This document shows, piece by piece, positions 1 through 49,300 of a stretch of DNA of 64,000 nt. Source of the stretch: Mobula hypostoma. Taxonomy: Eukaryota. The stretch lies in NCBI RefSeq assembly GCF_963921235.1, contig NC_086102.1, forward strand, positions 122,140,001 to 122,204,000. The letters are read 5' to 3'. Both the position numbers and the translations under genes were made by a program. The notes beneath the pieces were generated by a model. The model searched no databases. It saw nothing but the letters and a program-made list of their open reading frames with translations, and was not told the DNA's origin. The first letter of the stretch is position 1, and every line of letters begins with the position of its first letter.

Positions 1-492
1 ACAGGTAGCTGAAGAGATTGTGTAAGCATTAATAACAATCTTTCAAGAATCATTATTCTGGAATGGTTCCAGAGAACTGGAGCAAATGTCACTCCACTCT
101 AAGAAGAGAAGGAGGCAGAATCAAGGAGATTATAGGCCAGTTAGCTTAACTTCAGTGGTTGGGAAGGTGTTGGAGTCCATTATTAAGGGTGAGGTTTCGA
201 GGTACTTGGAGGCACCAAAAGTAGGCCAAAAGCAGTATGGTTTCCGTTAGGGTAAACCTTGCCACACAAATCTGTTGTAATTCTCTGAGGAAATAACAGG
301 CAGGATAGACAGCAGATGTTGTTTACTTGGATTTTCAGAAGGCCTTTGACAAGACGCCACACACAAGAACCCAAGGCATTATAGGAAAGGTACTAGTATG
401 GATAGAAGATTAGCTGATTGGCAGGACACAAAAAGTCATAATAAAGGGGGCCAAGGGGTCTGTACTAGGACCACTTCTTTTCATGTTATACG
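1..492 (+). mobile_element. CR1 LINE RT fragment (left part, split by Gypsy insertion)
   Basis: Decayed NYRPVSLTSVVGK, YLDFQKAFDK and GSVLGPLLF motifs; continues at 3777. Confidence 0.85.
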
Positions 493-3400: not shown

Positions 3401-3776
3401 AAGCCAGAACAGGCAAGTCGTAGTCTGAGGACGGAGTGGACTTGGAATGGGGTTGGGAGTCAATGCCAGAGGGGAAAAAAATTGACAGGTGAATGAACAG
3501 ACGGGAAAACAGTGAGCTCCAACATTGTGCATTAGACTGCTCATGAGAATGGGCCCTGGTTTCTTTTTTGTTTCTTTACCAACCCTATAGTCAAATTAAG
3601 AATTATAAAGTTCAATCGTTTAATTGCATATTGTGTACTGTTTGCTATTTCACAATTCTGATTTGTAACAGGGGAACACATCATGCATCATCCATCCAAA
3701 CAGGATTACTCAAGTTTGGCCAGGCCAGAGGCTGTCTTCCCCTAGATTAAGCTGCTCGCCGAACCGGAGGGTTACA
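493..3776 (+). mobile_element. Decayed, internally deleted Gypsy LTR retrotransposon (PNMA-type gag + integrase)
   Basis: TG..CA ends with TSD TACG/TATG. PNMA-like gag (LVESLSGRAANIV..DYMKALDNAFG) at ~570-1408 is joined directly to the integrase region (IHSDQG, TTPYHPQG). PPT at ~3199-3213. Many stops and frameshifts. Confidence 0.9.
3214..3776 (+). repeat. 3' LTR of Gypsy element 1
   Basis: Follows the PPT GGGGGGGAAGAG, ends GGGTTACA, and is followed by the TSD. Confidence 0.85.
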
Positions 3777-4690
3777 TATGCCAATGATTTGAATGATAGA
3801 ATTGATGGCTTTGTGGCCAAGTTTGCAGACAGGTGGTGGGGCAGGTAGTGTTGAGGACGTACGGAGTCTGCAGAAGGACTTGGACATATTGGGAGAATGG
3901 CAAAGAAGCAGCAGATGGCTCATAGTGTAAGAAGTGTATGGTGCAAGGAACAAAGGAGAAGACTATTTTCTAAACAGAGGGAAAACTCAGAAATCAGAGG
4001 TGCAAAGGGACTTAGGAGTCTTTGTACAGAATTCTGTAAAGGGTAACCTTCAGACTGGTCAGTGGTAAGGAACGCCAATGCAACGTTAGCATTCATTTTG
4101 AGGGGACTGGAATACAAGAGCAATGATTTGATGCTGAGACTTTATAAGACATTGTTCAGACCACACTTGGAACATTGTGAACAGTTTTGGGGGAGTCCAA
4201 AGGAGGTTCGTTCATGAGAATAATTCCAAGAATGAAAAGGTTACTGTATGAGGAGTGTTTGATGGCTCTGGCCCTGTACTCACCGGAGTTTAGAAGAATG
4301 AGGGGGGATCTGATTGAAACCAATCAAATAATGAAAGGTCTAAACAGAGTAGATGTGGAGAGGATGATTTCTATAGTGGGTAAGTCTAGAACCACAGGGC
4401 ACAGCCTCAGAATAGAAGGGCATCCCTTTAGAATAGAGATGAGAAGGTATTTCTTTAGCCAGAGGATGGTGAATCTATGGAATTCATTGCCATAGACGGC
4501 TATGGAGGGCAAGTCTGAGTATATATTTAAGACTGAGATCGATAGGTTCTTGGTTAGTCAGGGTGTCAAAGGTTATGGGGAGAAGGCAGAAGAATGGGGT
4601 TGAAAGGAATAATCAATCAGTCATGATGAAATGGCAAGACAGACCTGATGGGCTGAATAGCCTAATACTGCTTCTATGTCTTATGGCTCC
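3777..4690 (+). mobile_element. CR1 LINE 3' part
   Basis: NDL..IDGFVAKFAD resumes after the LTR. RRMRGDLIET and FFSQRMVNLWNSLP motifs. CR1 3' UTR ending CTATGTCTTATGG. Confidence 0.85.
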
Positions 4691-4759
4691 CACCTTCAAC
4701 AACATCTCTCCCTCAGTCACTACTTCAAATCATCACTCACTCCCGATGAGACTTGCTCT

Positions 4760-4956
4760 TTCAAATGGAGATTAGCAGTTTCTGAGATACTCAAACCTCC
4801 CCATCTGGCACCAACAATCATTTCATGGTAAAAGTCAACTAAATCATATTTCTTTTCCCATTCTGATGTTTGGTCTGAACAACAGATGTACTTCTTGACC
4901 ATGTCTGCATTGATTTGCTGATTAGATATTTGCATCAATGAACAGGTATACAGGTG
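4760..4956 (-). mobile_element. Tc1/mariner-derived fragment
   Basis: Encodes KKYDLVDFYHEMIVGARWGGLSISETA, resembling a Tc1 transposase N-terminal HTH. Confidence 0.7.
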
Positions 4957-5489
4957 AAGCTGTAAAATGGAATGAGGGTCTGAACTACTGCTCAGAACTG
5001 AAGTCAAAAGAAGAAAGCTGGAAATAGCTAGAAGCCTGTGAGACAAAACCTGAGTTAACATTATTGATCTATAACCTTAAGCAGAACAGTATAACAGACA
5101 ATGGGAGTTTTGGTGAAGGGTGGCCTGTGTGTGGTGGACTGTCACAGAACTTAGTATCAGGGATTTTGCATATTGTGGAATATGTTAATGATTTGAACTT
5201 AAACATGGAAGCCAAATTTAAGAAGTTTGCTGATGACTGAAAATTGGCAGTGTGATTAATAGTTTGGAAGAAAATTTAGGCTGCAGTATGCTATCAAATG
5301 GCTGATTAGATGGGCACAAAAGAGCAAATTCAATCCTAAGAAGCATTAGGTAATACACTTAAGGAAGGCAATATGTATTAGTAGAAGAATAGAAGAATTT
5401 TGGCTTCCATGTTCATACATGATCGAAGGATGATGAGATGATTATAAAGGTATACTAGACACTTCACTAAATCAGACAATGATTTAATA

Positions 5490-7615: not shown

Positions 7616-8165
7616 TCAACCAACACACATCAAAGTTGCTGGTGAACGCAGCAGGCCAGGCAGCATCTGTAGGAAGAGGTGCAGTCGACGTTTCAGGCCG
7701 AGACCCTTCGTCAGGACTAACTGAAGGAAGAGTGAGTAAGGGATTTTAAAGTTGGAGGGGGAGGGGGAGATCCAAAATGATAGAAGACAGGAGGGGGAGG
7801 GATGGAGCCAAGAGCCGGACAGGTGATTGGCAAAAGGGGATACGAGAGGATCATGGGACAGGAGGTCCGGGAAGAAAGACAAGGAGGGCGGGGGGGGGGA
7901 CCCAGAGGATGGGCAAGAAGAATATGCAGAGGGACAGAGGGAGAAAAAGGAGAGTGAGAGAAAGAATGTGTGCATAAAAATAAGTAACAGATGGGGTACG
8001 AGGGGGAGGTGGGGCCTTAGCGGAAGTTAGAGAAGTCGATGTTCATGCCATCAGGTTGGAGGCTACCCAGACGGAATATAAGATGTTGTTCCTCCAACCT
8101 GAGTGTGGCTTCATCTTTACAGTAGAGGAGGCCGTGGATAGACATGTCAGAATGGGAATGGGATG
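7616..8165 (-). mobile_element. Penelope-like element 3' fragment
   Basis: End of the GIY-YIG ORF (EEQHLIFRLGSLQPDGMNIDF), pyrimidine-rich UTR and hammerhead motif. Confidence 0.85.
7683..7718 (-). ncRNA. Minimal type I hammerhead ribozyme motif (Penelope-associated)
   Basis: AGTC CTGACGA AGG-GTCTCGG-CCT GAAAC GTC GACT: intact CUGANGA and GAAA core, stem I AGUC/GACU, stem II and GUC cleavage triplet. Confidence 0.8.
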
Positions 8166-9360: not shown

Positions 9361-9410
9361 TTGGACTTTTTGGGAAAGTTGTACTTGTCGTTGTGGTAAG
9401 TGGTGTGAAG

Positions 9411-12386
9411 ATGGATCGAGATAAGATTGTAAATTGGTGTGAATTGGAGGAACATGAGGAGCAGCTGCTGAAGGTGCTGAGTCGACTGAAGGAGGAAGGA
9501 TTAAAACTTTCCCTGGATAAATGTCAGTTCTGCAAGACGTCAGGCAGTTATGTTGGGCACATAATCTCGCGAAATGGAGTGGCCACCGATCCAGATAAGA
9601 TAGCCGCAGTCACCACCTGGCCGAGACCTCAGAAGGTGAGCGCCTTATGCTTGTTTTTGGGGTTTTGCGGATATTACCGGCGGTTCGTGAAAGGATATGC
9701 GAAAATGAGTCATCCATTGAACCAGCTGCTGTGTGGCTATCCACCGGTGGGGAGGAGGAGGAAGGGAGACCGAGGGTTGGAGGTAGGAGGATACTTGAAC
9801 CCGGGGGAGCCTTTTGGATTGAGGTAGGATGCTCAATGTGAGGAGGCGTTCTAATCTCTAAAAAGGGCGCTGACGCAGGCCCCAGTGTTGGCATTTGCTG
9901 ATCCCCGGAAGCCGTATGTTCTACACACTGATGCCAGTCACGACGGTCTGGGGGCTGTTCTGTACCAGGAACAGGGAAACGGATTGAGGCCGGTAGTGTT
10001 TGTCAGTCGGAGTTTGTCGCCATCTGAGAGAAACTATCCCACTCACAAGCTGGAGTTCTTGGCGTGGAAATGGGCGGTGGTGGACAAGTTGAGTGACTAC
10101 CTATATGGGGCCCAGTTTGAGGTGAGAACTGATAACAACCCCCTCACTTATATCCTGACCTCGGCGAAGCTGGATGCTACTGGGCACCGGTGGTTAGCAG
10201 CCTTGTCTGCCTATGATTTCAGCCTGAAGTACCGCCCGGGGAGTCGGAACATCGATGCAGATGCCCTGTCTCGTCGGGTGCACGACGAGCCGGGCACGGC
10301 CGAGGAGTGGAAGAGTGTCCCCGCCCAGGGAGTAAAGGCCATGTGTCAAGTTGGGAGTGACGGGGAAGTAGGAGCACAGATGGGAACGGATCGGGCAGTA
10401 GATCAACCTGGGGCTGACGATGACGCGCTGCCCACTGTTTACTGTAATGTGACTGCTCTGAGGAACAGGCAGCTGCCAGAGTTGAGTCCCCAGGAAGTAG
10501 AGGCGGCTCAGCGTGATGACCCAAGCATTGGCACTATCTGGTACGCGGTTAGCCGGGGTGATATGGGGCAGGTGGAGAAGGCGAAACATGCCTCCGTTCC
10601 CCTACTACTGAAGGAGTGGCCTCGGTTGAAGCTGAAGAACCACGTCCTGTACTGGGTCACGTCGCCTCCGGACCACCCCCGGCACTGGCAGCTAGTCATG
10701 CCTGAGAAGTATCGGAAGACTGTGCTCCAGGCTCTACATGATGATTCCGGGCACTTAGGGGTAGAGAAGACCTATGGATTAGTCAAGGACTGGTTTTACT
10801 GGCCCCGGATGAGGGGGGAGGTGGAAGAATACTGTAAGACCTGTAGCCGTTGCGTCAGGAGGAAGACCTTGCCTGCGCAGGCGGCCCCGTTATCCTACTT
10901 GCAGCGTGCGGGACCCATGGACCTGGTGTGTATGGATTTCCTGTCTATTGAGCCAGACACCAGCAATACCATGAATGTCTTGGTCCTCACGGATCACTAC
11001 ACTAGATATGCGCAGGCTTTTCCTACTAAGGATCAGAAAGCCACTACAGTGGCGAAGGTGTTATGGGAGAAGTACTTTGTTCATTATGGCCTTCCCCGGC
11101 GGATCCACAGTGATCAGGGACGGGACTTTGAGAGCAGGCTTATACATGAATTGCTGGATATGCTTGGGGTTGAAAAGTCCAGAACCACTCCCTATCACCC
11201 ACAGGGTGATCCTCAACCCGAGAGGTTTAACCGGACCCTGCTGGACATGCTCGGCACCTTGGAGATTGGACAGAAGAGTAAGTGGAGTCGGCACATTGCC
11301 CATTTGGTTCATTGTTACAATTGTACTCGCAATGATGCTACGGGGTACTCGCCCTACTATCTGATGTTCGGACGGGAAGTGAGGTTGCCCATTGATCTGT
11401 GTTTTGGGACTGAAGCGGGGGAAATACCTTCGAAGCCATGTCTGAAGTACGTGTCCGATATGAGGAGAGAGTTGAAAAGGGCGTACGAGTTGGCTGAGGC
11501 GGCAGCCACCAAGCAGAACCAGCGGAATAAAAGGAGGTATGATCAGAAGGTAAAGTTCGTCCAGCTACTGCCGGGAGACCGAGTCCTTATCTGGAATTTA
11601 GGACTACAGGGTAAGCACAAGTTGGCGGACCGTTGGGCAGCCACCCCCTATGTGGTGGAGAGTCAGATGCCGAATCTCCCGGTTTACCGGGTGAGACCTG
11701 AGGGAGGGCAGGGGCCTGTCAAGGTACTCCATCGGAACCACCTGTTGCCTCTGGGTTGAGAGATGAAGATGGACCCAGAGCCCGAATGGGAGTTTACTCC
11801 TATTACGAGGACTCTGCGAGGGCGCAGGAAGAGCCCGCTGCGAAGAAAACGGGGCCGGGTCCTCACCTCGAGAAGGGATACGTCATCGGAAGATGATGAG
11901 TCGGACGTGTGGTACCTGCTTCCGTTCGCTGATTCCCCGGTGCTGGGAGAAGAGACTCTTGGCCCTTCCATCACTGAATCAGGGGAACCAAGGGAGGGTG
12001 TTGCAGAGCCGCCTGTATTACAGCCGGGATTGGGGGAGGGTGTTGCAGAGCCGCCTGTATTACAGCCGGGATTGGGGGAGGAGAGGGTGGAGGCAGAACC
12101 CGAGCCAGAGGGCTCACAGGGGCAGAGGGATCCCGGTGAAGGGGAAGGTCCGACAGATAGGCCCGAGGGGTCAACTGGGGTGTCTGAACAGGGAGAGTCA
12201 GCAGAGGAAGTACAGAGGCCTCAGAGGAGTAGGCATCCCCCGGAAAGACTCACTTATATAGCGCCGGGAGAGCAGGGTGTGATCTCTACTGCCCTGCAAA
12301 GTTATGTCACTGCTTTATGCACCTGGGTTGGGTTTTATGTTTTACAAGGAGCACTGCTGAACTCTGTTAACGTCATGAGGGCATGA
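9411..12386 (+). pseudogene. Gypsy gag-pol remnant: 13 gag codons fused to RT C-terminus, RNase H and integrase
   Basis: Single frame with stops at 9825, 9852 and 11757. The 624-aa open segment 9885-11759 has RNase H (LHTDAS, LEFLA, TDNNPL, DADALSR), an HHCC zinc finger and the DDE core (MDF, HSDQG, PERFNRTL). Confidence 0.92.
11992..12079 (+). repeat. 42-bp in-frame tandem duplication
   Basis: [14 protein letters not shown] occurs twice, with a 42-nt period (12001/12043). Confidence 0.9.
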
Positions 12387-19500: not shown

Positions 19501-19547
19501 TTGGTGGTTATTAGCCAAACAAATGCAGCCTGATTTTGTAGATATGT

Positions 19548-20328
19548 TAAACCCAAAAAAAAGCAAACAGAACAAAACAAGGCTAAACCAATATCTTAAA
19601 TCGAACGGGTTCAGTAATGTCGTCAACTCCACTCCTCTATTCATATATTTTAAGTTAATACGTAGGATTCGGAAAGGTCAAATTATGTCATATGAAAGTG
19701 TTGAATAAATGGTTTCCAAGTCTCTTCAAATTTAACCAAAGGATCAAAAATATCACTTCTAATTTTTTCTAAATTTAAACATAATATAGTTTGGGAAAAC
19801 TACTGGAATGTAGTAGGAGGATTGGTCTCCTTCCAGTTCAATAAAATAGATCTTCTGGCCATTAAAGTAACAAATGCAATCATCCAACAGGCTGAAGAAG
19901 ATAAAGGTCTAGGTTCTACCATTGGCAATCCAAAAGTTGCCGTAATAGGATGGGGTTGTAAATCAAAATGCAGAACTGTTGAGATAATATCAAAAATATC
20001 TTTCCAATATTTTTTCAAAAGAGGACAGGACCAAAACATATGAGTTAAAGAAGCCACCTCAGAGTGACATCTGTCACAAATAGGGTTTATATGGGAATAA
20101 AAACGGGCTAATTTATCTAATTTGGGGTTTTTCTTTGTATTTTTTTCTTTTTATTTCTTTTTTTCTACGATTAATTATATCGTGAGTTTGGAAGTCTACT
20201 ATACCTGTGTTATCTGAAATTTTTTCTGTATGTTTATTAACAATAAGATTAGTCCATTCTCTTTGTATCAACATTGTTATTTTGTTTATAATCTTGGAAA
20301 AATTAATAAAAAGATTTAAAAAGAAAGA
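19548..20328. mobile_element. L1 insertion with 5' inversion
   Basis: The minus segment (19548-~20117) encodes the L1 ORF2 C-terminus (CDRC..ASLTHMFWSCP). The plus segment (~20118-20328) is 3' UTR with AATAAA and an A-rich tail. TSD TGATTTTGTAGAT(A/G)TGT at 19531-19547 and 20329-20345. Confidence 0.88.
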
Positions 20329-20709: not shown

Positions 20710-21900
20710 TAAGACATAGGAGCAGAGTTAGGCCATTTGTCTATACAATATTTGATCATAGCTGATATATTATTCCCATTCAATCCTATTTTCCTGACTT
20801 CTCCTCTTATTAATCAAGAACATAACCTCTGTTTTAAACATACCTTACCCTCCACAACTGTTTGTGGCAATGGATTCCACAAATTCAACACCCTCCAGCT
20901 AAAGAAATTCCTTCTGATCTCTGTTTATTCTGAAGCTGTGCCCTCTGGTCCTAGATCCTAACAACTATCAGAAACATCCGCTCCACATCCAATCTATCCA
21001 GGCCTTTCAATATTCAACAGGTTTCAATGAGATTCCACTTATTTTTCTAAACTTCAGTGAGTACAGGTCCAGAGCCATCAAACGCTCGTGATACATTAAC
21101 CCCATCATCTCCAAGATCATTGTCACAAGCCACCTCTGGATCCTCTCCAATGCCAGCACAAACTTACTGAGAAAGGGCCCAAAAGTACTCACAATACTCC
21201 AAATGTGGTCTGACCATTGGTTTATAAAGCCTTTGCATTATTTCTTTGCTTTTTTATTTTAGTCCTCTCAAAATGAATATCAACATTGGATTTGCCCCCA
21301 TTATTACGTGCTCAACATGCAGGTTAGCCTTTACAGAATCCTGCACTAGGGCTCCCAAGTCGCTTTGCACCACTTTCTAAATTCTCTTCTCATTTACAAA
21401 ATAGTCTACATCTTTACTCCTTCCATCAAAGTACATGATTATACACTTCCCTTCACTGTATTCCATCTGTCACTTCTTTGCCCATTGTCTCAAAAGTATC
21501 CAAAAGTTCTTGCTTCCTCAACACAACCTGCCTCTCCACATATCTTTATACTATCCACAAACTTGGCCACAAATTCATCAATTCCATCATCCTGATCATT
21601 AATGCATAGCATGAAGAGTAGCGAACCTAACACTGACCTCCACTAGTCACCGGCAGCCAACCAGAAAAGGCTCCCTTTATTCCTAATCTTTACCTTCTGC
21701 CAGACAGCCAATCTTCTATCCATGCTAGTATCTTTCCTGCAACACAATGGGTTAACTTGTTCAAAAACCTCATATGCAGAACCTTGTCAAAGGCCTTCTG
21801 AAAACCCAAGTAAACATCATCCACTGGCTCTCCATTGTCTATCCTATTTGTTACTTCCTCAAAGAATTGCATCAGGTTTGTCAAGCAAGATCTTCCCTTA
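20710..21900 (-). mobile_element. CR1 LINE fragment
   Basis: KGRSCLTNL..FFEEVT..YLGFQKAFDKV and LERIQR motifs; CR1 3' UTR near 20710. Confidence 0.85.
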
Positions 21901-23739
21901 AAGCAAATGCATTTCCAATGCATTCCTCCATGGACATCTTGACGGCCTGGCTGACCAACAACTTTGAGACAGGCCAAAGGACTTCTTTCATCGAGCTGAT
22001 GATCTGCCAGCAGCACTTGACATTCATCTCCATGTGTGTCCTTGGGAACAGCCCAAAGATCAGAGAATCATCTGTCACACAGCTGCACAGGATAAATCAC
22101 TATTCAGGCCTTTGCACCTTTCTCCACACCCTCTTCGCAAACCCCCAGTCCATAAAGAGGTGGTATCTTCCTCACTAGTCGTCCTTGGGCAGCACACTGT
22201 AGGAGTGATGCTCTGGGCATGCAGGAGGATCAGACTAGGAGAGCCCCTCTAAGTACCAGCTGGGCAAGGTCTTAGTGGCTGTTAACAAGGCCTGGTGATG
22301 AGGCATTCTGCCAGATGATCTGGACAATCTGCTTAGGAAACCACCCCACTGTGTCCATCAAGTCCTTCTCCTGCAGTGACTGCCAGATGTTCTGTGCTGA
22401 CCACTGCCTGATGGACTTGTGATCAAAGGTGTTGGTCTGGAAGAACTTTTCCATTAAGACTGGGACACTGAGTGGCAGTGGGGCCAGACCTATTCTTTGC
22501 AACACCACAGACAGACAGAACCTTGGCACATAATGATTCTACACACACAGCCTGATACAGCCACACACAAGGTGATCATTAGGGTGAGGGTGACATTGGA
22601 TATGTTTTTGCCTCTGTTGCCCAGGGACTTGTACATTGTGACCTGTCTGACCCACTCCATCTTGGATCCCCAGACGAGCCTAAAGACAGTTGGGTGATTT
22701 CCAATTTGGAGGAGCAGGGGATGGGCCACATCTGTGCCAAGTACAGCAGCCCTGAGAGCACTTCACTACCTAAGGACCAGGTTCTTCCCAGTTATCAATA
22801 GGGAATGAGCTCTCCACAGTCCCAATTTCCTGACTTACTTCCCCAATGTACTCCAGCCAATTTTTGTTACATGCCTCAGCCCCTCTGAACCAGATTCCAT
22901 GCACCTTCACATAATCAGAACTGATAGTGAAGGGAATACTGAATCACTACAGCCAGTCGTCAAAGTACATGGCCTCGCTCTTCATGAAGTTAACTCCGGC
23001 CCCTGATGCCAACTCAAACTGGTTGCAAATGACCTCAGAACTGAGCAGAAGGTAGTGACATTGTCCATGTACAGGGAGGTTTTCACTTGGATCCTTCCAC
23101 TCCCTCTTACGCTCTTGGCCTTCTTGACAGCTTCAGCAAAGGGTTCTATACAGCACAGGACTGCTATACTTCACACAGGTGTGACCCATCTCTCACTTAG
23201 GCAGCAACACCCCTCTTATGCTCTCATCCCTGATTGCTTCAGCAAAGGGTTCTATACAGAACACAAACAAGATAGGGGAAAGAAAGAGTAACCCTACCTG
23301 ACTCCAGACTTGATGGGGAAGCTATCTGCTTCCTACCCTTTGATTTGGATTGCAATGCAGATGTCCAAGTAAAGCAGTTGGATCCAATTCCTGATTTCCT
23401 CCCCATTTTGGAGAGTACGTCCATCACATACGTACATGTGTGATACCCTGTCAAAGGCTTTCTCCTGGTTCAGGCTGACAAGGCAGGCATCCACCCACTT
23501 GTCTTGCACATAGCGAATGGTGACTCTGAGCAGCATGAGGCTTAATCCCGTTGACAATGGCCTTGAACAAGATCTTATTGTCTTCATTCAACAGCAAAAT
23601 GGGTCTCCAAGTCCTGATGTCATCCCTCTTCCCCCTTCTGCTTGCAGATGAGGTAATAAGGCACTTCCTCATAGAGTCAGCTAGAAGCATAGCATTGTAT
23701 ACTTCCTGGAGGCCTGGGACATCCAGTCCACAAAGCCAA

Positions 23740-24369
23740 TGAAACACCCCGGTTTCCTTGGCTGTGTAAGTCTAGGGAAGACAACTTCCAGCCCCGCCAA
23801 ACTTTAGAGACTGAGGCACACTGGATCCCACCCCAAACCTCAGTTTGTGTGGATGTTGTGTCATTTGCTATCCCATTACAAATTACTGCCAAGAAATAAC
23901 AGACAGTACACTGTATACAATTAAAGGAATTATATTTATGAATCTTAACTGAAGGGTTAGTAAAGAATAACAATAAGAAAAAGGCACATTCTAATTAAAC
24001 AGTCAAATGTGCACAAGTTGGAGCTCATCTTGAACTTCTCTGTCAGTCGCGCGCTGGGTCCTTGGTCAACGTGAAAGCACACATCACCTTCCGAATGTCG
24101 TTCGCAATCCATCTCGAACAAATGAATACACCACTGGATCGTATACTACAACCAGTTCTTCCCAGCATCTTCTCTCTTCATCTCCAAGACCAACCTTATT
24201 GTCCCTCACCAAGAAAAACCTAACACTAATTGGATTGCACATATTCCACATCATCTCTTATCTTCAACAATAACCCAAACAGGCTGAAAGCAGAACAAAC
24301 AGCTCTTACAGAGCTGCACAAAATGAAATACATACAGCATAACAGTAAAAACTGAACAAGGGCATTACA
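23740..24369 (-). mobile_element. Gypsy solo LTR inserted in Tx1 ORF2
   Basis: TGTAATG..GTTTCA ends, TSD CCAA/CTAA, and similarity to the 3' half of LTR 3214-3776. Interrupts the Tx1 AEL..ALW motif. Confidence 0.8.
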
Positions 24370-25829
24370 CTAATTACAACTCAGCCTGTAAGCTGTTGCT
24401 TCTAAGAGTTTTATTTGATTCAAAGGAATGGATGGAGCCAGTCAGCTCCTCCAGAGTCAGTGGCTGGTCCAGCCTCTCTCATTTGCTATTACCTAACACC
24501 TCCATAATAGAGGACATGAAGTTCTCGGAGGCGGTGGTGTCAAAAAGATTCCAAGATTCATAGTACATTTACTATTTAAGTATGTATACAGAATACAACT
24601 CAGAGATTCATCCTCCCGCAGACTGCCACAAAACAAAGAAACACCATGGAACCCGTTCAAGAAAACATCAAACACCCAACAGGCAAAAGAAAATAAAGCA
24701 TGCAAATGGCAAAAAGTGAGGAAACAACACGGAATATTAAACATCAAATCAGGAGTCTAGTAGTATTTAGTTTAATTTAGTTCAGAGCTGCTAACCCTCT
24801 GCAGACCTTTCTGTCATACAGACTGACAAAGGAGGATCTGCAAATCCTTAATGCTACTGAGTCATCTTCTTCCTTAAGCTGTGGATCACACAGCACCCTG
24901 TGAACCTTTTGGAAGAAGAAGCATAAGCACATCTCATCCTGTTCCATGATGCTGATCCTGGACTGTAAGATTATCTCAGAGGATTCAGCAATGAAATGCT
25001 CGGCTTACCAGCCTTTCTTCTCTCGTAATTCCTCCTTCACATCCACTGCAGAAGAAGTTGTTGAACTCTGTCTGGAATTTACACAGTTCCCTTTGACCCT
25101 GCCTTGCTTTCTAAATCCCACTGTGGATGAAGAACCTCTTAACGTGCTCCTTGGTCAACAGGGGAATCAAAGAGGTGTTTGAAAGTTCTCCTCTCTAGTT
25201 CTTTAATGCTCTCAGGGATCAGCAGTCTGACATTCAGCTTCCATGCTGCCAGCCTGCCTTATGGTCCTCCCACAGCGGGCAGGAGGCTCGGAGAAGGCAG
25301 TGGTCAAAGAAGAACACCAGCGTGACATCGATGGATCTGACCATGACAGACTCTAACATGACGAGGAAGTCAATTCGGGAGTGGGCTGAGCCATCTGATC
25401 ATGACTGGGGGGGGGGGGGGTTGCAGCTGCGTTCCGCCTGCAGGGATGCTGAAGGCATCACGTAATTTAGCTACTTTAACCGTTTCCATCAGGAACCTGG
25501 AGGTGCTGTCCACACTACCAGATCATCCAGCCTTGTGATGGTGATGCAATTGAAGTCACCGGCCAGAATGGCCACTGGGACGTCGCCAGCAGAGGTGGGT
25601 GCTGCTCGAGGACAACCAGCCGCTCACTCCGCATGGGTGAGGCATATACATTCATTAGGCTGGAGTGGAGTATTTCCATACATTACACTTGCCACAAGGA
25701 GGCAATCCACAACCACCTCTCTGACTTGGGTGTTTGAGAAGTTGCTCCCCATTAGCAAACTCCCCAGCTAGAAGCACAACAAGCATTGCCCCCAACCACA
25801 CAGACAAACCATGGGACCAACATCACGAC

Positions 25830-26450: not shown

Positions 26451-26971
26451 TATGTCTATCCACGGCCTCCTCTACTGTAAAGATGAACCCACACTCAGGT
26501 TGGAGGAACAACACCTTATATTCCGTCTGGGTAGCCTCCAACCTGATGGCATGAATATTGACTTCTCTAACTTCCGCTAATGCCCCACCTCCCCCTCGTA
26601 CCCCATCCGTTATTTATATACACACATTCTTTCTCTCTCTCTCTCTCTCCTTTTTCTCCCTCTGTCCCTCTGACTATACCCCTTGCCCATCCTCTGGGTT
26701 TTTCCCCCCTCTCCCTTTTCCTTCTCCCTGGGCCTCCTTTCCCATGATCCTCTCATATCCCTTTTGCCAATCAACTGTCCAGCTCTTGGCTCCATCCCTC
26801 CCCCTCCTGTCTTCTCCTATCATTTTCGATCTCCCCCTCCCCCTCTCAAATCTCTTACTAGCTCTTCCTTCAGTTAGTAGTGACAAAGGGTCTCAGCCCG
26901 AAATGTCGACCGTACCTCTTCCTAGAGATGCTGCCTGACCTGCTGTGTTCACCAGCAACCTTGATGTGTGT
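26451..26971 (+). mobile_element. Penelope-like 3' fragment
   Basis: TSD AGCCTAGATC (26441-26450 / 26972-26981), ORF end and degenerate hammerhead. Confidence 0.85.
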
Positions 26972-28053
26972 AGCCTAGATCGTAGCCAGTATTGTAAGGC
27001 ACTGACACGTCACATTGTTCTCTCCACACTGTGAACACTCAAAGTTTTATGTCCATGACTGAGGTCTTGCATCACAGTCCATTTTCACTCAGTCTGAGCC
27101 TTGGTAAACTATCGCACTGTTTGTGGGCTCCGGTACTGATCCTCCCCTGGGTATGGCAATGCTGGTGGTGTACCTGGAGAAGATTGGACACTGTTTCTCC
27201 TCTAGTCGATCAACACCATCCATGTCCCTGAGCTGGGGTGTGCTGGAGGCTGGCCTGCTCCCAGACTCTTGGAGCTGCGGGGTGATGGTTCCTGTGCTGT
27301 TCTTGGTCTCCTGGAGCTGGGGGGGCCAGCAGCTTCTGTACAACTCCTGGTTTCCTGGAGCTAGTTTTGATTAGGCTGTGCTGCTCCCAGTCTCCTGCAC
27401 CTGGGGGCTTGGCATCTGTGCTGCCCCCAGTCTCCCAGGGTTAGGATTTGGTCAGCAGAATTCCTTCCCCATCCATAATTGTCTGTTGGATCCTTTCCGA
27501 TCCTTTCCACTTTTTTGTCTTCTGTTTCGTGCTTCCTCTGCCTGCACCAATTTCCAATGATTGCTTCATCCTCCAATGATGAGAGGTTGCTAGCACCTGT
27601 TTGCTATCCTGCCCCTTCTTCCCATTCCTTTTATTCTTGGCAGCCCATTGCCCTTTGCATGGTGTCTTCACCACCTGCCATTCCTCTGCTTGTCCCTCTG
27701 CCCCCCTCCCCATGGACTCTTCCTCATCTTGTGGAGCGGCCTGGGGCTTTTTTGGCTGGGGATGGGAGACAAGGTGACCAGCCTTTCGTGAGTCACAGCC
27801 TGAGTTACGGTGTCAGCCGTGGCCTCCAAATTGGCGGTGGGTCTGTCAGTGTTTGCCTAGGTATTATCAGTGCCAACTCCTCCTCTTACTACCTGTGCGT
27901 GGGTGCTGGCATGTTTTAGGCAGGCTTTGTAGAAGTGACCTGCCTCTCCACAGACGTTGCAGCATTTGCTTTCCTCGCAGTTCTCTGTCTTCCTGCTTGC
28001 AACTCTTGCCAACGACCAAAATACACTGAGCCACCACATGTCCAGACTTGTTA

Positions 28054-28291
28054 CAGATATGACACAGCCTGGATTGACCAGCATACACCATGTAACCGCC
28101 GTTCCCTCCAACGGCAGACTGAGAGAGGGTGGCAGATACGACACAGCCTGGATTGACCAGCATACACCATGTAACCACCGTTCCCTCCAACGGCAGACTG
28201 AGAGAGGGTGGCAGATACGACACAGCCTGGATTGACCAGCATACACCATGTAACCGCCGTTCCCTCCAACGGCAGACTGAGAGAGGGTGGC
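28054..28291. repeat. 79-bp tandem triplication in Tx1 ORF1
   Basis: GACACAGCCTGG recurs at 28061, 28140 and 28219; units are nearly identical. Confidence 0.95.
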
Positions 28292-28921
28292 TAATGGAGC
28301 TATTTGAATCCACCCTTAGCTTGACCTTCACCTAGGGCTTGCTTCTCCTGATCCCAAACACACTGTTAATGTTGACACATTTGCCTGCTCCCTCAACGTA
28401 ATAGACAAGAAAGAAGACATCTACAGCGGGCATATGTGAGTTCAATGGGCACTGTAATCACACACTCCTAGGTGGGGATGGTGAAGACAGCCTGCGCCTT
28501 CAGCAGTCATTGAGGCACCTCATTCCCCTTCTCTCGAAAATCCTGCAAGAACTTCTGCCGTCCCACCGCACAGGTGAAGGTTACGTCAAAAAACTGTTAC
28601 CCATGAAGTCCTGCACGCAGTAGATGTCAATCACCTCGAACTTGCAGCACTCGAGCAGGATCTTCCAAATTTAGTAGTCTCCATTGAAGGGGTTTCCCTC
28701 ATCGAGATCCTTCACCGTCACCCTGACAGGGTTTCAGATCCCTGTTCTTCCAGTCAATGTGCTGGTAGATGCAGCCATTCTGACTGGGCTTTGATTGCCG
28801 GAAAGGGGTGTTAGATTGAATTCAAAATCAGCATGAGGATCCACCCCTACATCAGCAGGTTAAGCTCTTATCAGCCCCTTGATCACGATCAGTCTTTTTT
28901 CTATCCTCAGAGATCCACCAC

Positions 28922-28961
28922 GATACTGCACTTGATCTTAGCCAAAAGACCGAGAAGCAGT
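28922..28961 (-). pseudogene. U2 snRNA 5' fragment (nt ~1-40)
   Basis: GCTTCTCGGTCTTTTGGCTAAGATCAAGTGCAGTATC matches vertebrate U2 nt 4-40 at 35/37 positions; the rest of U2 is absent. Confidence 0.9.
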
Positions 28962-31916: not shown

Positions 31917-33837
31917 ACACACACAGAATGCTGGAGGAGCTCAGCAGGCCAGGCAGCATCTATGGAAAAGAGTACAGTCAACATTTCAGCCCGAAACCCT
32001 TCTGCAGGACTGGAGAAAAAAAGCTGAGGAGTAGATTTGAAAGGTGGAAGGAGGAGAGAGAGAAGCACCAGGCGAAACTTGGAGGAGGATAGAGGAAACA
32101 AAGAGCTAGAAAGTTGATTGGTGAAAGAGAGAAGGCTATGGAAGAAGAGATGGGGGGACCGGGGGGAGACAGCACCAGAGGGAGACGATGCGTGGGCAAG
32201 GAGATAACATGAGATAGGGACAAGGGGGTGGGAAATGGCGAAGTGGGGGGAGGTGGGAGGATTTACTGGAAGTTTGAGAAATCGATGTTCATGCCATCAG
32301 GTTGGAGGCTACCTAAATGGAATATAAGGTGTTGTTCCTCCAACTTAACTGAAGCCTTACCCTGTCAGTGGAGGAACCCATGGATGGACATATTGGAATA
32401 GGAACAGGAAGTGGAATTAAAATGGATGGCCACTAGGTGATCCTGCTTATTCTGGTAGACAGAGCGTAGTTGCTCGGCGAAGTGGTAGAGGCCTCACCAG
32501 GAGCACCAAACACTGTACATAACCCCAACAGACTCACAGGTGAAGTGCCACCTCACCTGGAAGGACTGGGACCCCCTGAATGGTAGTAAAGGAGGAGGTG
32601 TAGGGGCAGGTGTAGCACTTGTTCCACTTGCAAGGATAAGTGCCAGGCAGGGACGAACGAACAAGGGAGCGATCCCTGCGGAAAGCAGAAAGTGGGGGGG
32701 GGGGGGAGGGAGGGAGAGACATGTTTGGTGATGGGATCCAGTTGGACGTGGTGGAGATCTCGGAGGATTATGTTCTGGATGTGGAGGCTGGTGGGGTGGT
32801 AGGTGGGGACAAGAGCAACCCTATCCCTGGTAGCGTGGCGGGAGGATGGGGTAAGAGCAGACGTGCGTAAAATGGAAGAGATGCAGTTGAAGGCAGCATT
32901 GATGGTGGAGGAAGGGAAGGCTCTTTCTTTGAAAAAGGAGGACATTTCCTTCGTTCTAGAATGAAAAGCCTCATCCTGGGAGCAGATGCAGCAGAGACAG
33001 AGGAATTCAGAGAAGAGGATGGTGTTTTTACAAGTAGCAGGGTGGGATGAGGTATAGTCCAGGTATGCCTGCCTATTTGGTGGCTACGTACAACAGTCCA
33101 TGATCCAAGCCTATACTGGTGACCGTACCACACTTTTCCTACACTACATCAATGACTGCATTGGTGCTGCTTCCTGCACCCGTGCTGAACTCGTCAATTT
33201 CATCCACTTTGCCTCCAACTTCCACCCTGCCCTCAAATTCACCTGGTCCATTTCTGGCCGTTCCCGTTCTCGATCTCCGGAGACAGCTTATCCACCGATG
33301 TCTTTATAAACCAACAGACTCTCACAACTTCTGATATGTCCATCCATGGCCTCCTCCACTGTCAGGATAAGGCCACACTTAGGTTGGAGGAATAACACCT
33401 TATATTCCGTTTGGGTAGCCTCCAACTGGATGGCATGAACATTGATTTCTCAAACTTCCAGTAATGCCTCCCCCCAACCTTTACCATTTCCCATCCCCTT
33501 GCCCCTCGCTCATGTTATCTTCTTGCCCGCCCATCGCCTCTCTCTGGTGCTCCTCCCCCTCCCCTTTTTTCTTTCTTCCACGCCCTTCTATCTCTTTCGC
33601 CAATCAACTTCCTAGTTCTTTGCTTCATCCCTCCCACTCCAAGTTTTGCCTGGCGTTTCTCTCTCCCTTCGTCCTACCTTTCAAATCTACTTCTCAGCTT
33701 TTTTTCTCCAGTCCTGCCGAAGGGTTTGGGCCTGAAACATCGACTGCACCTTTTACTATAGATGCTGCCTGGCCTGCTGAGTATGCGTTTTGTATGCGTT
33801 GCTCAGATTTACAGCATCTACAGATTTTCTCTTGTTT
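31917..33837. mobile_element. Penelope-like insertion with inverted arms
   Basis: Minus arm 31917-~33062 and plus arm ~33066-33837 (RT YINDCIG motif), both ending in hammerhead-bearing 3' ends. TSD GTGAGAGGAATAA(C/G)A(G/T)CC on both sides. Confidence 0.88.
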
Positions 33838-40588: not shown

Positions 40589-41605
40589 CTGTAAAGCAGC
40601 AGAGACTTCCATTTGTATGTAAACAATTACTGCTCTCCATCAGATCATTAGCTTCATATTTTCTTCACCTGTCCTTTTCCAAAAATCATATCAAGCCATC
40701 TTTCACCATGTGAAAGTGGAGTCAAGCAACTTAATTTTACCCAAAAGCTACTCTACATGCTTCTGGGCCATTAGTCTTACAGCCATTCTCTCAGTACAAG
40801 TGAGGGCACCTTGACTTTACTCAAAACTGCCCATAAGACTGCAAAGAAAATGAATGAAATTAAAAAGAACACTGCAAATGTTGAACATATTTAAAAGAAA
40901 ACCATAAAATGCTTGAAACTTGCAAAAGATCAGACAGCACATGCAAGAAAATAGTAAGGGTAGACCACCATCAATGAATCAAAATCCAATTTATTTAACC
41001 AATCTTGATAGGATAATCCTTTCTTCATAGAACTTCGCCTAATCAATACATTTTGATTTGCCTCCAAAGTTAGTATATTATTTATAAATGGACCAAATCT
41101 GTACATAGTACTCCAAGTGTGATTTGACTAACATTACTGCACAAATGTAACAATATTTCTAAACTCGAACTGTCTTGTAATAATGTCAATATGCCATTTG
41201 GTTTCCTATTTGCTGTACCTCCCTTTTATTTTAGTAACTCATAGCAATAGATCCTTCTGAACTCTACTCACTTGCAGTTCCTCTCCATTTCAACAATTTT
41301 GTCTTTGCTGACTTCAATCTTTTCCATGTTAAACTCCATTGGCCAAGTTTTTGCCGACTCATGTAATCTATTTCAGTCCTATTGAAGAGACCAAATATCC
41401 TCAGTGAAGCTTGTCCTTCTCACCTATTTCTGTGTCAATGAATACCTTACGCTCTACTCCCCGCCCACATCAATATAAACAGCAAACAACTGGAGCCAAG
41501 AACTAATCCTCAGGGCACTCCACTGCATGCATCCTTCAATCTAAAATAAAGACCCATTTATTCTGACAATCTCACTTCTATGTGACAACCACATTACAAC
41601 CATCA

Positions 41606-41790
41606 TTTTAGATCTCCCACTCCCCCTCCCACTTTCAAATCTCTTACTAGCTCTTTTCTCAGTTAGTCCTGACGAAGGGTCTCAGCCCAAAACATCGATT
41701 GTACCTCTTCCTAGAGATGCTGCCTGGCCTGCTGCGTTCAACTTTGATGTGTGCTGCTTGAATTTCCAGCATCTGCAGAGTTCCTCGTGT
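41606..41790 (+). mobile_element. Short Penelope-like 3' end with hammerhead motif
   Basis: AGTCCTGACGAAGGGTCTCAGCCCAAAACATCGA; TSD TTACAACCAT. Confidence 0.8.
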
Positions 41791-46344: not shown

Positions 46345-49300
46345 TCTGAGGCAGAACATTCCTCAGTAAGGGCCTCACCTTTGTCCCCATCCTCCCACAC
46401 CACAGTGAGTCCGCCCCCGCCATGACACTGAGCTCTTCTTCTGCTGCCTCTGTCTCCGTGCCTACTTCTTTAGCAAGGACTCTACACCCCACACCGATGA
46501 CCCCTTCTCCCATCTTCAACCTTCCTCCTCCTCCTCCTGGACACCCCACCCTGATCTCCTGTCTGCCCTGGATCTTATCATTGCCAACTACCAACCGGTT
46601 ATGAACCATCTCGACCTCCACACTTCTTTCTCCAATTCCAACCTCACTCCTTCCAAATGCTCTGCTCTCCGCACTAATCTTAACCTCACCATCAAACCCG
46701 CAGATAAGAGTGTGCTGTAGTAGTCTGGCGGACTGACCTCTACGTTACTGAGGCCTAGCGACAACTGTCAGACACCTCCTCTTACTTAACCATTGAACAG
46801 GATCCCACTAAGGAGCATCAGGCCATTGTCTCCCACACCATCACCAACCTTATTAACTCTGAGGATCTCCCATCCATTGTCACCTACCTCATAGTTCCCT
46901 TACCCTGCACCTCCCGTTTCTACCTCCTACGCAAGATCCAAAAATCTTCCTGTCCAGGTAGACCCACTGTTTTTGCTTGTTCCTGCCCCACTCAACTCAT
47001 ATCTGCATATCGCGACTCAATTTTGTTTCCACACCCCCACCCCCACCGGTTCAGTCCATTCCTACCTATATCCGTGACACTTATAATTCCCTGGCTGAGC
47101 ATCTTATTTTCACTAAGGATGTCCAGTCCCTATACACCTCCATCCCCCACCAGGAAAGCCTTAAACCTCTCCATTTCTTTCGGGACACAGACCCAATCAA
47201 TTCCCCTCCACCACCACTCTCCTCCGTCTGGCAGAACCTGTCCTCACTCTCAATAACTTCTCCTTTGGTTCCTCTCCCTTCCTTCAAACAAAAGGTGTAG
47301 CCATAGGTACTCACATGGGTCCAGCTATGCCTGCCTTTTAGTCGGCTACGTGGAACAGCCGACGTTCAAAGCCCACACTGGTGTCACTCCCCAACTTTTC
47401 TGACGCTACATCAACAGCTGCATTGGTGCTGCTTCCTGTATCCATGCTGAGCTCTTCGATCTCATTAACTTCGCCTCCAACTTCCGCCCTGCCCTCAAAT
47501 TTACCTGGTCCATTTCTGACACCTAAAAACATAGAAAATAGGTGCAGGAGTAGGCCATTCGGCCCTTCAAGCCTGCACCACCATTCAGTATGATCATGGC
47601 TGATCATCCAACTCAGAACCCTGTACCAGCCTTCCCTCCATACCCCCCGATCCCTTTAGCCACAAGGGCCATATCTAACTCCCTCTTAAATATAGTCAAT
47701 GAACTGGCTTCAACTGTTTCCTGTGGCAGAGAATTCCACAGATTCACCACTCTCTGTGAAGAAGTTTTTCCTAATCTCGGTCCTAAAAGGCTTCCACTTT
47801 ATCCTCAAACTGTGACCCCTCGTTCTGGACTTCCCCAACATCGGGAGCAATCTTCCTGCATCTAGCCTGTCCAATCCCTTTAGGATTTTATATGTTTCAA
47901 TAAGATCCCCCCTCAATCTTCTAAATTCCAATGAGTATAAACCTAGTCGATCCAGTCTTTCATCATATGAAAGTCCTGCCATCCTAGGAATCAATCTGGT
48001 GAACCTTCTTTGTACTCCCTCTATGGCAAGGATGTCTTTCCTCAGATTAGGGGACCAAAACTGCACACAATATTCCAGGTGTGGTCTCACCAAGGCCTTG
48101 TACAACTGCAGTAGTACCTCCCTGCTCCTGTACTTGAATCCTCTTGCTATGAATGCCAGCATACCATTCGCCCTTTTCACCGCCTGCTGTACCTGCATGC
48201 CCACTTTCAATGACTGGTGTATAATGACACCCAGGTCTCGTTGCACCTCCCCTTTTCCTAATCGGCCACCATTCAGATAATAATCTGTTTTCCTGTTTTT
48301 GCCACCAAAGTGGATAACCTCACATTTATCCACATTAAATTGCATCTGCCATGAATTTGCCCACTCACCTAACCTATCCAAGTCACCCTGCATCCTCTTA
48401 GCATCCTCCTCACAGCTAACACTGCCGCCCAGCTTCCTGTCATCCGCAAATTTGGAGATGCTGCATTTAATTCCCTCATCCAAGTCATTAATATATATTG
48501 TAAACAACGGGGTCCCAGCACTGAGCCTTGCGGTACCCCACTAGTCACTGCCTGCCATTCTGAAAAGGTCCCGTTTATTCCCACTCTTTGCTTCCTGTCT
48601 GCCAACCAATTCTCTATCCACATCAATACCTTACCCCCAATACCGTGTGCTTTAAGTTTGCACACTAATCTCCTGTGTGGGACCTTGTCAAAAGCCTTTT
48701 GAAAATCCAAATATACCACATCCACTGGTTCTCCCCTATCCACTCTACTAGTTACATCCTCAAAAAATTCTATGAGATTCGTCAGACATGATTTTCCTTT
48801 CACAAATCCATGCTGACTTTGTCCGATCATTTCACCGCTTTCCAAATGTGCTGTTATCACACCTTTGATAACTGGCTCTAGCATTTTCCCCACCACCGAT
48901 GTCAGGCTAACCGGTCTATAATTCCCCGGTTTCTCTCTCCCTCCTCTTTTAAAAAGTGGGGTTACATTAGCCACCTTCCAATCCTCAGGAACTAGTCCAG
49001 AATCTAGAGTTTTGAAAAATTATCACTAATGCATCCACTATTTCTTGGGCTACTTCCTTAAGCACTCTGGGATGCAGACCATCTGGCCCTGGGGATTTAT
49101 CTGCCTTTAATCCCTTCAATTTACCTAACACCACTTCCCTACTAACATGTATTTCCCTCAGTTCCTCCATCTCACTGGACCCTCTGTCCCTTACTATTTC
49201 CGTAAGATTATTTATGTCCTCCTTAGTGAAGATAGAACCAAAGTAGTTATTTAGTTGGTCTGCCATGTGCTTACTCCCCATAATCAATTCACCTGTTTCT

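What the first reader, a model, noticed from the sequence alone, without database searches (positions are those of the whole stretch)
28778..28961. Tx1/Keno-like LINE carrying a U2 snRNA head, away from a U2 locus
Seen: U2 nt ~1-40 are fused directly to the 5' UTR of a Tx1-type element. The U2 match begins at about U2 +1, no downstream U2 sequence is found at the other end, and no convincing PSE lies upstream. Known: Keno-family Tx1 elements insert site-specifically near nt 37-38 of U2 genes. Inference: this copy derives from a chimeric transcript started at a U2 promoter and was reinserted in a BARD1 intron. That would make it a U2-headed LINE lineage that borrows the snRNA promoter and has relaxed target specificity, and a possible precursor of snRNA-headed SINEs in chondrichthyans.
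Basis: partly seen in the sequence, partly recalled or inferred. Interest (0 to 1): 0.72.

Follow-up and report, generated by a model that had tools for sequence, protein, structure and literature searches.

The report
Dead Tx1 LINE with U2 leader
An old, broken jumping gene of the Tx1 type in a ray genome starts with the first 40 bases of the U2 spliceosomal RNA, cut at exactly the spot where U2-targeting relatives insert; this is a real but single example of a kind already described in crocodilians.

Summary
On the minus strand, 28961-28922 is U2 snRNA nt 1-40 (36/40 to the consensus). It is the only U2 signal in the 64 kb. A 143-nt leader follows, then the ATG of a Tx1-type ORF1, and then decayed endonuclease, RT and zinc-finger regions down to about 21900.

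The U2 piece ends after ...AGTATC (nt 40). A complete element that I fetched (L004), flanked by U2 on both sides, breaks at the same base. Published Keno and Utopia 3' flanks begin at U2 nt 39. The head is therefore the 5' junction of a Keno-type insertion, not a random fusion.

I found no snRNA promoter motif upstream and no U2 3' half anywhere in the window. However, the element's own 3' end is missing: a CR1-like LINE cuts it about 28 codons before the stop. The absent U2 3' half therefore proves little.

My best reading (about 0.55) is a copy made from an RNA that began at U2 +1 in a source copy sitting in a U2 gene. An on-target hit in an orphan U2 gene or pseudogene remains possible (about 0.27).

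The claims of a lineage, relaxed targeting and SINE ancestry could not be tested, because I had no access to the genome or to reads. U1- and U2-headed Tx1 families are already known from crocodilians. This scan had noted a U1-derived leader on a Tx1 LINE elsewhere in the same genome.

The parts
28922..28961 (-). U2 snRNA nt 1-40 (the head); 36/40 bases match the consensus and it ends after ...AGTATC
   Evidence: Rfam U2 alignment; unique pattern hit; same breakpoint as L004:30/31
28779..28921 (-). 143-nt leader (5' UTR) of the LINE. Its first bases, GTGGTGGATCT, resemble the first bases of the U2-flanked element L004 (GTTGGATCT).
   Evidence: the similarity of the first 16 nt has p about 0.011 against random pairs; the fold is not unusual, z = 0.49
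27164..28778 (-). ORF1 remnant: ZCCHC3-like RNA-binding domain followed by two CCHC knuckles, with many stops and frameshifts
   Evidence: tblastn with P0108 and P0110 from residue 1; PF23057 hits on two consecutive pieces; CCHC motifs read in the translation
28054..28291 (.). 79-bp unit repeated 3 times (98% alike) inside the first CCHC knuckle of ORF1; a later local duplication
   Evidence: TRF; self-BLAST
26452..26971 (.). Foreign repeat inserted into the LINE between ORF1 and the endonuclease. It is 87% identical to 7623-8145 and related to pieces at 33335-33468, 41602-41753 and 59145-59306. It may extend down to about 25830.
   Evidence: Self-BLAST
25252..25767 (-). Apurinic-type endonuclease remnant of ORF2
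   Evidence: tblastn, Mobula P0044 residues 72-240, 42% identity, E 4e-25
22769..23753 (-). Reverse transcriptase remnant, with a small internal duplication (23102-23157 and 23211-23263)
   Evidence: Weak Pfam RVT_1 hits on two pieces; tblastn with P0044 and whale-shark proteins; 59% identity to P0044 over 190 columns
21890..22571 (-). ORF2 C-terminal region including the zf-RVT-type motif. The match stops about 23-28 residues before the stop codon of the intact relatives.
   Evidence: tblastn with P0047, P0043, P0068, P0076, P0079 and P0091
20707..21912 (-). 5'-truncated CR1-like LINE that cuts off the 3' end of the Tx1 element (not part of it; it marks the break)
   Evidence: Translation; self-BLAST to other CR1-like copies at 3783-4632, 48538-48811 and 249-452

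Best explanation
This is a dead, 5'-complete copy of a Tx1-clade LINE (about 7 kb with later inserts) belonging to a family common in sharks and rays. Its RNA carried U2 snRNA nt 1-40 as a leader.

The leader is the upstream half of a Keno-type target site. A source copy sat in a U2 gene at nt 38-40. Transcription started at U2 +1 from the external U2 promoter and ran into the element, which is a 5' transduction. The whole chimeric RNA was then reverse-transcribed into a site that is not a U2 gene.

Shown: the head, its exact breakpoint, its continuity with the leader and ORF1, and the lack of any U2 gene, promoter motif or U2 3' half in 64 kb.

Inferred: read-through transcription from a U2 gene, insertion at a non-U2 site, and whether the head is a one-off or a trait passed on in a subfamily.
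For: (1) U2 nt 1-40 starts at about +1 and is followed, with no spacer, by a 143-nt leader and the ORF1 ATG.

(2) The breakpoint after nt 40 is identical to that of L004. L004 is a complete Tx1-like element with U2 nt 11-40 on its 5' side, and a short poly(A) followed by U2 nt 39+ on its 3' side. L006 has the matching 3' junction at U2 nt 38/39. The literature places Keno and Utopia 3' flanks at nt 39 (PMC4640811; PMC6136364).

(3) The first element bases after the breakpoint are alike in the ray copy and in L004 (p about 0.011).

(4) There is no octamer upstream, no PSE at the proper distance above chance, and no other U2 or U1 in the window.

(5) The family looks dispersed and high-copy. Dozens of whale-shark gene models and annotated copies in 8 other shark and ray species match it. 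A strict U2 specialist would not reach that number.

(6) U1- and U2-headed Tx1 families exist in crocodilians. Earlier unchecked notes of this scan report a U1 leader on a Tx1 LINE in this same genome.
Against: - There is only one copy, about 10% decayed, and no second copy with the head was available.
- The 3' end of the element is lost and no target-site duplication was found. The insertion site itself is therefore undefined, and a U2 3' half could have been lost together with the 3' end.
- No ray U2 promoter was available for comparison.
- The RT tree leaves the relation to the U2-inserted elements unresolved.
Confidence: 0.55

Rival explanations
1. This is an ordinary on-target insertion. 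A Keno-type element cut an orphan U2 gene, or a promoter-less U2 retropseudogene, that lay in this intron. The U2 nt 39+ half was later lost together with the element's 3' end.
For: The breakpoint is exactly the Keno site. The element's 3' terminus and everything beyond it are replaced by a CR1-like LINE and other repeats, so the missing U2 3' half is expected either way. A retropseudogene would also start at +1 and lack a PSE.
Against: No PSE or octamer is present, although the head itself is only about 10% decayed. There is no trace of U2 nt 39-188 in 64 kb, even at permissive thresholds. The family seems dispersed and abundant rather than confined to U2 genes.
Confidence: 0.27
2. This is a template switch. 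At the end of reverse transcription the enzyme jumped from the 5' end of the LINE RNA onto a U2 snRNA molecule and copied its first 40 nt, as proposed for SINEU and Tx1-Mar heads and for U6-L1 chimeras.
For: Kojima 2015 favours template switching for the recurrent U1 and U2 additions in crocodilian SINEU and Tx1-Mar. Earlier unchecked notes report a U6/LINE chimera and a U2 5' end fused to a SINE in this genome.
Against: A jump would have to land by chance on the very base used by U2-targeting elements (nt 40 of about 188). End-to-end jumps normally copy the whole acceptor RNA, as in full-length U6 chimeras. The LINE here is 5'-complete, and its first bases match those of an on-target element.
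Confidence: 0.1
3. This is a chance neighbourhood. A short U2-like string or U2 fragment merely lies next to an unrelated LINE 5' end.
For: The Rfam score (35.3 bits) is below the family's gathering score (46).
Against: 36 of 40 bases match, and the 29-nt core occurs once against 0.00 expected. The junction is the same base as in L004. ORF1 starts 143 nt later, as expected for a full-length element.
Confidence: 0.03

Closest known systems
Keno (U2 snRNA gene-specific Tx1-clade LINEs; Kojima & Fujiwara 2004, as cited in PMC4494074, PMC4640811 and PMC6136364)
   Same: It has the same APE-type LINE architecture: RNA-binding/CCHC ORF1, endonuclease, RT and a zf-RVT tail. Its 5' flank is U2 up to nt 38-40, the same base as in the U2-flanked elements L004 and L006 fetched here.
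   Different: No U2 sequence follows the element, and no U2 gene or promoter lies nearby. The family appears dispersed in shark and ray genomes. RT grouping with U2-inserted elements is unresolved. No labelled vertebrate Keno sequence could be loaded.
Tx1-Mar families with snRNA heads in crocodilians (Tx1-11_Crp with a U2 head; Tx1-2_Crp, Tx1-2B_Crp and Tx1-4_AMi with U1 heads) and SINEU (Kojima 2015, PMC4494074)
   Same: It is a Tx1 LINE whose 5' end is a short piece of the 5' part of U2, sitting outside snRNA genes. In that paper's tree, these families are relatives of Keno.
   Different: There the head is a consensus feature of many copies and the families target a Mariner transposon. Here there is one decayed copy, in a cartilaginous fish, and its target preference is unknown. 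Kojima attributes the heads to template switching, whereas the nt-40 breakpoint here points to a target-site (read-through) origin.
5' transduction and co-transcription of target-specific LINEs (R2 with 28S rRNA; the SVA-MAST2 5' transduction), as discussed in PMC4494074
   Same: The element lacks an obvious promoter of its own, and its RNA begins in the upstream host gene. The upstream piece is carried to new sites.
   Different: No self-cleaving ribozyme was found in the leader. The upstream gene is a Pol II snRNA gene with an external promoter.
Utopia (RLE-type U2-targeting LINEs, PMC4640811)
   Same: It uses the same U2 site (3' flank from nt 39).
   Different: Utopia has one ORF with a restriction-like endonuclease. 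The window element has ORF1 plus an APE-type ORF2. A Utopia-like insertion was seen in passing in L002.

Membership tests
Keno (U2-targeting Tx1 LINE) | Two-ORF LINE of the Tx1/L1 group: ORF1 with an RNA-binding domain and CCHC knuckles; ORF2 with APE endonuclease, RT and a zinc-finger tail | tested here: met
   tblastn with shark and ray proteins covers ORF1, endonuclease, RT and C-terminus in order. Weak Pfam hits to PF23057 and RVT_1. An ESM Atlas structural lead points to a 'Transposon TX1' endonuclease cluster, for the relative P0044 only.
Keno (U2-targeting Tx1 LINE) | The 5' flank is U2 snRNA ending at nt 38-40 | tested here: met
   The U2 part ends at nt 40, window position 28922. The breakpoint is identical in the U2-flanked element L004.
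Keno (U2-targeting Tx1 LINE) | The 3' flank is U2 from nt 39 (TCTGTTCTTATCAG...) | tested here: inconclusive
   No such sequence occurs anywhere in the window. However, the element's 3' end is cut off at about 21900 by a CR1-like LINE.
Keno (U2-targeting Tx1 LINE) | The RT groups with Keno in a phylogeny | tested here: inconclusive
   The window RT sits in a chondrichthyan clade (99/96) that is sister to salamander sequences. The two U2-flanked elements, L004 and L006, form another clade (95/91). The deep nodes are open. An AU test does not reject joining them (p = 0.47). No named Keno sequences were available.
snRNA-headed Tx1 lineage (Tx1-Mar type, Kojima 2015) | The snRNA-derived head is shared by many copies that lie in unrelated, non-snRNA flanks | not testable with these tools
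   The genome and reads were out of reach. A scan of metagenome contigs for the ORF1 found nothing.
snRNA-headed Tx1 lineage (Tx1-Mar type, Kojima 2015) | A short 5' piece of U1 or U2 sits at the very 5' end of a full-length Tx1 element | tested here: met
Functional U2 snRNA gene | Full-length U2 of about 188 nt, with a PSE near -55 and an upstream octamer or enhancer | tested here: not met
   Only nt 1-40 are present. No octamer lies within 500 nt. The PSE-like strings at -97 and -59 (seen by eye) are at chance level.
snRNA-LINE template-switch chimera (U6-L1 type) | A whole snRNA, or its 3' end, joined to a usually 5'-truncated LINE or other retrocopy at variable points | tested here: not met
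   Only the 5' 40 nt of U2 are present, the LINE is 5'-complete, and the junction is the fixed Keno site.

The most novel reading that the evidence does not exclude
Sharks and rays carry a dispersed Tx1 subfamily that descends from a Keno-type U2 specialist and keeps U2 nt 1-40 as a heritable leader. If so, the snRNA heads of Tx1-Mar LINEs and SINEU-type retroposons arise by read-through from master copies sitting in snRNA genes (5' transduction), not by template switching. The fixed nt-40 breakpoint would be the signature of that origin.
Probability: 0.25. Interest if true: 0.6.

Novelty: new member of a known kind. Interest (0 to 1): 0.35.

Why it matters
How snRNA-derived heads get onto LINEs and SINEs, and how such head-bearing elements are transcribed, was left open in the crocodilian work (PMC4494074).

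A head that stops at the exact base where U2-targeting elements integrate is direct sequence evidence for one answer: the head comes from the target gene, through a transcript started at the snRNA promoter.

If more copies confirm it, this would tie Keno-type specialists to dispersed snRNA-headed families across vertebrates. It would also show how a site-specific LINE can escape its target. As it stands, this is one fossil copy and adds a data point, not a new principle.

Tried and rejected
- **Sequencing runs and reads.** After that I sent no typed letters of that stretch to collection searches. Later work on it used references in local, family and fold tools only.
- **Word-index protein search** with a window RT piece found no candidates.
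- **HMMER search of the representatives** with a 106-aa RT piece gave only weak hits, but these led to whale-shark relatives.
- **Shark and ray loci at NCBI and one ENA contig** were listed without DNA. EukProt proteins are not on record.
- **Metagenome scan for ORF1 relatives** found none.
- **Target-site duplication.** There is no shared k-mer of 8 or more next to the junction.
- **A second, decayed U2 head just upstream.** This would indicate stacked insertion. The alignment score is at chance level: 9% of shuffles and 5% of windows reach it. Rejected.
- **PSE-like strings.** The one at -97 has about one match expected per 500 nt. The one at -59, seen by eye, is no better than chance. There is no octamer.
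- **Ribozyme or special fold in the leader.** Neither was found.
- **Remainder of ORF2 after the CR1-like insert.** There is only an 11-residue weak match at 20431-20399 (E about 4), which is not credible.
- **BARD1 exons.** None were recognised by motif scans or among ORFs of 130 aa or more, so the gene context is left unverified.
- **ESM Atlas** gave only a soft lead to the 'Transposon TX1' family.

Full report
**What is there.**

The feature lies on the minus strand. Rfam's U2 model matches 28961-28887, but only model positions 1-40 truly align (35.3 bits; E 2.5e-5 for the 800-base stretch; E 0.002 for the whole window). Read base by base, 36 of 40 positions agree with the U2 consensus (mismatches at nt 2, 3, 13 and 34). 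A 29-nt U2 core pattern occurs once in the window, against none in 100 shuffles. No snRNA reaches Rfam's gathering score anywhere in the 64 kb. The permissive whole-window scan finds no second U2 or U1 fragment.

**Anatomy of the element.**

- After U2 nt 40 (28922) comes a 143-nt leader, then an ATG at 28778-28776.
- From that ATG the translation aligns from residue 1 with full-length ORF1 proteins of whale shark (P0108) and horn shark (P0110). The start (MA..S...L.G...N.VRVTVK) is recognisably the same.
- Two consecutive ORF1 pieces hit the ZCCHC3-type RNA-binding domain PF23057, at profile positions 24-46 and 48-72. Two CCHC knuckles follow.
- A 79-bp unit inside the first knuckle is triplicated at 98% identity.
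- A foreign repeat sits at 26452-26971 (87% identical to 7623-8145).
- Further down, shark and ray proteins map in order:
  - APE endonuclease, 25767-25252 (42% to Mobula P0044).
  - Linker, 25110-24377.
  - RT, about 23750-22770.
  - C-terminal zinc-finger region, 22571-21890.
- The match to six intact C-termini stops 23-28 residues before their stop codon, at about 21900. There a 5'-truncated CR1-like LINE begins (21912-20707).
- I could not find the rest of ORF2, a 3' UTR, a tail or a target-site duplication.

The copy is therefore 5'-complete and 3'-broken. It is riddled with stops and frameshifts, which fits the roughly 10% divergence seen in the head.

**What the head is.**

The literature places the 3' flank of Keno (APE-type, Tx1 clade) and of Utopia (RLE-type) at U2 nt 39, TCTGTTCTTATCAG... 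(PMC4640811; PMC6136364). I also obtained direct comparators.

- Among small contigs encoding the RTs nearest to the shark and ray family, L004 is a complete Tx1-like element. L004 is a Logan contig of 5108 bp. It starts inside U2 (nt 11-40 at L004:1-30). The element runs from 31 to 5086 and ends in a short poly(A). U2 nt 39+ follows at 5087.
- L006 is a TARA metagenome scaffold. It carries an APE/RT/zf-RVT element followed by U2 nt 38-82.
- L004's 5' breakpoint...AGTATC | GTTGGATCT, is the same base as in the window...AGTATC | GTGGTGGATCT. BLAST carries the alignment 10 nt past the U2 part.
- The similarity of the first 16 element bases has p about 0.011 against random pairs from the two elements.

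The head is therefore the upstream half of a Keno-type target site. It is not an arbitrary piece of U2.

**How it probably arose.**

Three routes can put U2 nt 1-40 in front of a full-length Tx1 element.

(a) *Read-through.* A source copy inside a U2 gene is transcribed from the external U2 promoter, starting at +1. The chimeric RNA is then copied into a new, non-U2 site. Points in favour:
- The match starts at about +1.
- There is no octamer within 500 nt upstream. The two PSE-like strings, one at -97 and one at -59 seen by eye, are no better than chance.
- No U2 or U1 lies elsewhere in the window.
- The family looks abundant and dispersed. There are dozens of whale-shark gene models and annotated copies in Hemiscyllium, Cetorhinus, Heterodontus, Stegostoma, Heptranchias, Mobula and Chiloscyllium. 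That is hard to square with strict U2 specificity.

(b) *On-target insertion* into an orphan U2 gene or a promoter-less U2 retropseudogene. This cannot be excluded. The only decisive side, the 3' junction, is destroyed, so the absence of U2 nt 39+ carries little weight.

(c) *Template switching* onto U2 snRNA, as Kojima proposed for crocodilian heads. This would need the jump to land by chance on the Keno base. It would also need to copy only 40 nt of the acceptor. I rate it low.

My odds are (a) 0.55, (b) 0.27, (c) 0.10 and chance 0.03.

**Tests of related ideas.**

- A decayed second U2 head just upstream would indicate a headed element re-inserting on target. It is not supported.
- The leader has no unusual fold (z = 0.49) and no known ribozyme.

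**Family placement.**

I built a maximum-likelihood tree of a 207-column RT core with 37 rows. The window, L003-L006 and the two L002 copies were read by projection onto P0044, with X at breaks. No rows were dropped.

- The window RT falls in a chondrichthyan clade with Mobula and whale-shark sequences (99/96). Its best identity is 59%, to Mobula P0044. The clade is sister to salamander sequences (98/98).
- The two demonstrably U2-inserted elements form a separate clade (95/91) together with three unlabelled sequences.
- The deep forks are open.
- An AU test does not reject uniting the two groups (p = 0.47).

Keno membership by phylogeny is therefore undecided. No named Keno or Tx1-Mar sequence could be brought into the analysis.

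**Comparison with what is known.**

Keno's U2 targeting is long known. Kojima 2015 described crocodilian Tx1 families, relatives of Keno, that carry U2 (Tx1-11_Crp) or U1 heads and insert elsewhere, together with the SINEU retroposons. The present copy is the same kind of object in a cartilaginous fish. My two literature searches found no report of it there.

Earlier, unchecked notes of this scan describe the U1 counterpart in the same genome: a Tx1 LINE with a 50-base U1-derived leader, and Tx1 copies in U1 genes. The new element of evidence here is the exact nt-40 breakpoint, which favours a target-derived origin of such heads.

**Limits.**

- No other copy from this genome could be examined. 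Chromosome-scale assemblies came back without DNA.
- The BARD1 setting was not verified.
- All statements about a lineage, relaxed specificity or SINE ancestry remain untested.

Noticed in passing
L004:1-5108: This Logan contig (SRR30713846) is a complete Keno-type element of about 5.06 kb. It is bounded by U2 nt 11-40 on one side and U2 nt 39+ on the other, with a 2-nt overlap (TC) and a short poly(A). The U2 flank has CAGCTTAAT, as in the invertebrate-like U2 genes of L002, so the host is probably not a vertebrate.
   Followed up: partly
L006:520-3969: This TARA ocean metagenome scaffold carries an APE/RT/zf-RVT LINE whose 3' end abuts U2 nt 38-82. It is a second Keno-type on-target insertion from an unidentified marine eukaryote.
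   Followed up: partly
L002:1404-7823: This lies in a U2-U1 gene array of an unidentified invertebrate-like genome. U2 nt 1-62 is followed by a 1636-aa ORF that has an RT but no APE domain, and then by U2 nt 38-188. It looks like a Utopia-type (RLE) insertion with a target duplication of about 24 bp.
   Followed up: partly
L002:8250-18800: Two Tx1-like copies start 4 nt after a U1 gene whose last stem-loop is shortened (158 nt and 121 bits, against 164 nt and 149 bits for the intact U1 at 19517-19680). This may be a U1-3'-end-associated Tx1 family, recalling the scan's notes on Tx1 in U1 genes of the ray.
   Followed up: no
window 28054-28291: The 79-bp triplication inside ORF1 is 98% identical, while the element as a whole is about 10% decayed. 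The duplication is therefore much younger than the insertion.
   Followed up: no
window 19600-20150 (minus strand): This is a 5'-truncated L1-like 3' fragment with an open 116-aa zf-RVT piece (PF13966, E 1.6e-4). It starts right after an A-rich run at 20120-20170 and is less decayed than the Tx1 copy.
   Followed up: partly
window 9393-12386 (plus strand): There are long open reading frames (144, 624 and 207 aa) of an LTR-retrotransposon pol with RNase H and integrase-like sequence. A second, similar C-terminal piece lies at 2261-2752. The element looks fairly young.
   Followed up: no
window 26452-26971; also 7623-8145, 33335-33782, 41602-41753, 59145-59306: A repeat of about 520 bp was inserted in the Tx1 copy. 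It recurs in the window next to the places that earlier notes call a Penelope insertion and a hammerhead unit.
   Followed up: no
window 60605-60789 (plus strand): An Rfam MIR6140 model hit (49.8 bits, E 2e-6) falls far below the gathering score of 140. It is probably a repeat-derived hairpin.
   Followed up: no
window 29058-29040 (minus strand, -97 from U2 +1): The string TCACCTTGAATTTACTGAG matches 10 of 15 specified PSE consensus positions, but at the wrong distance. About one such match is expected per 500 nt.
   Followed up: yes
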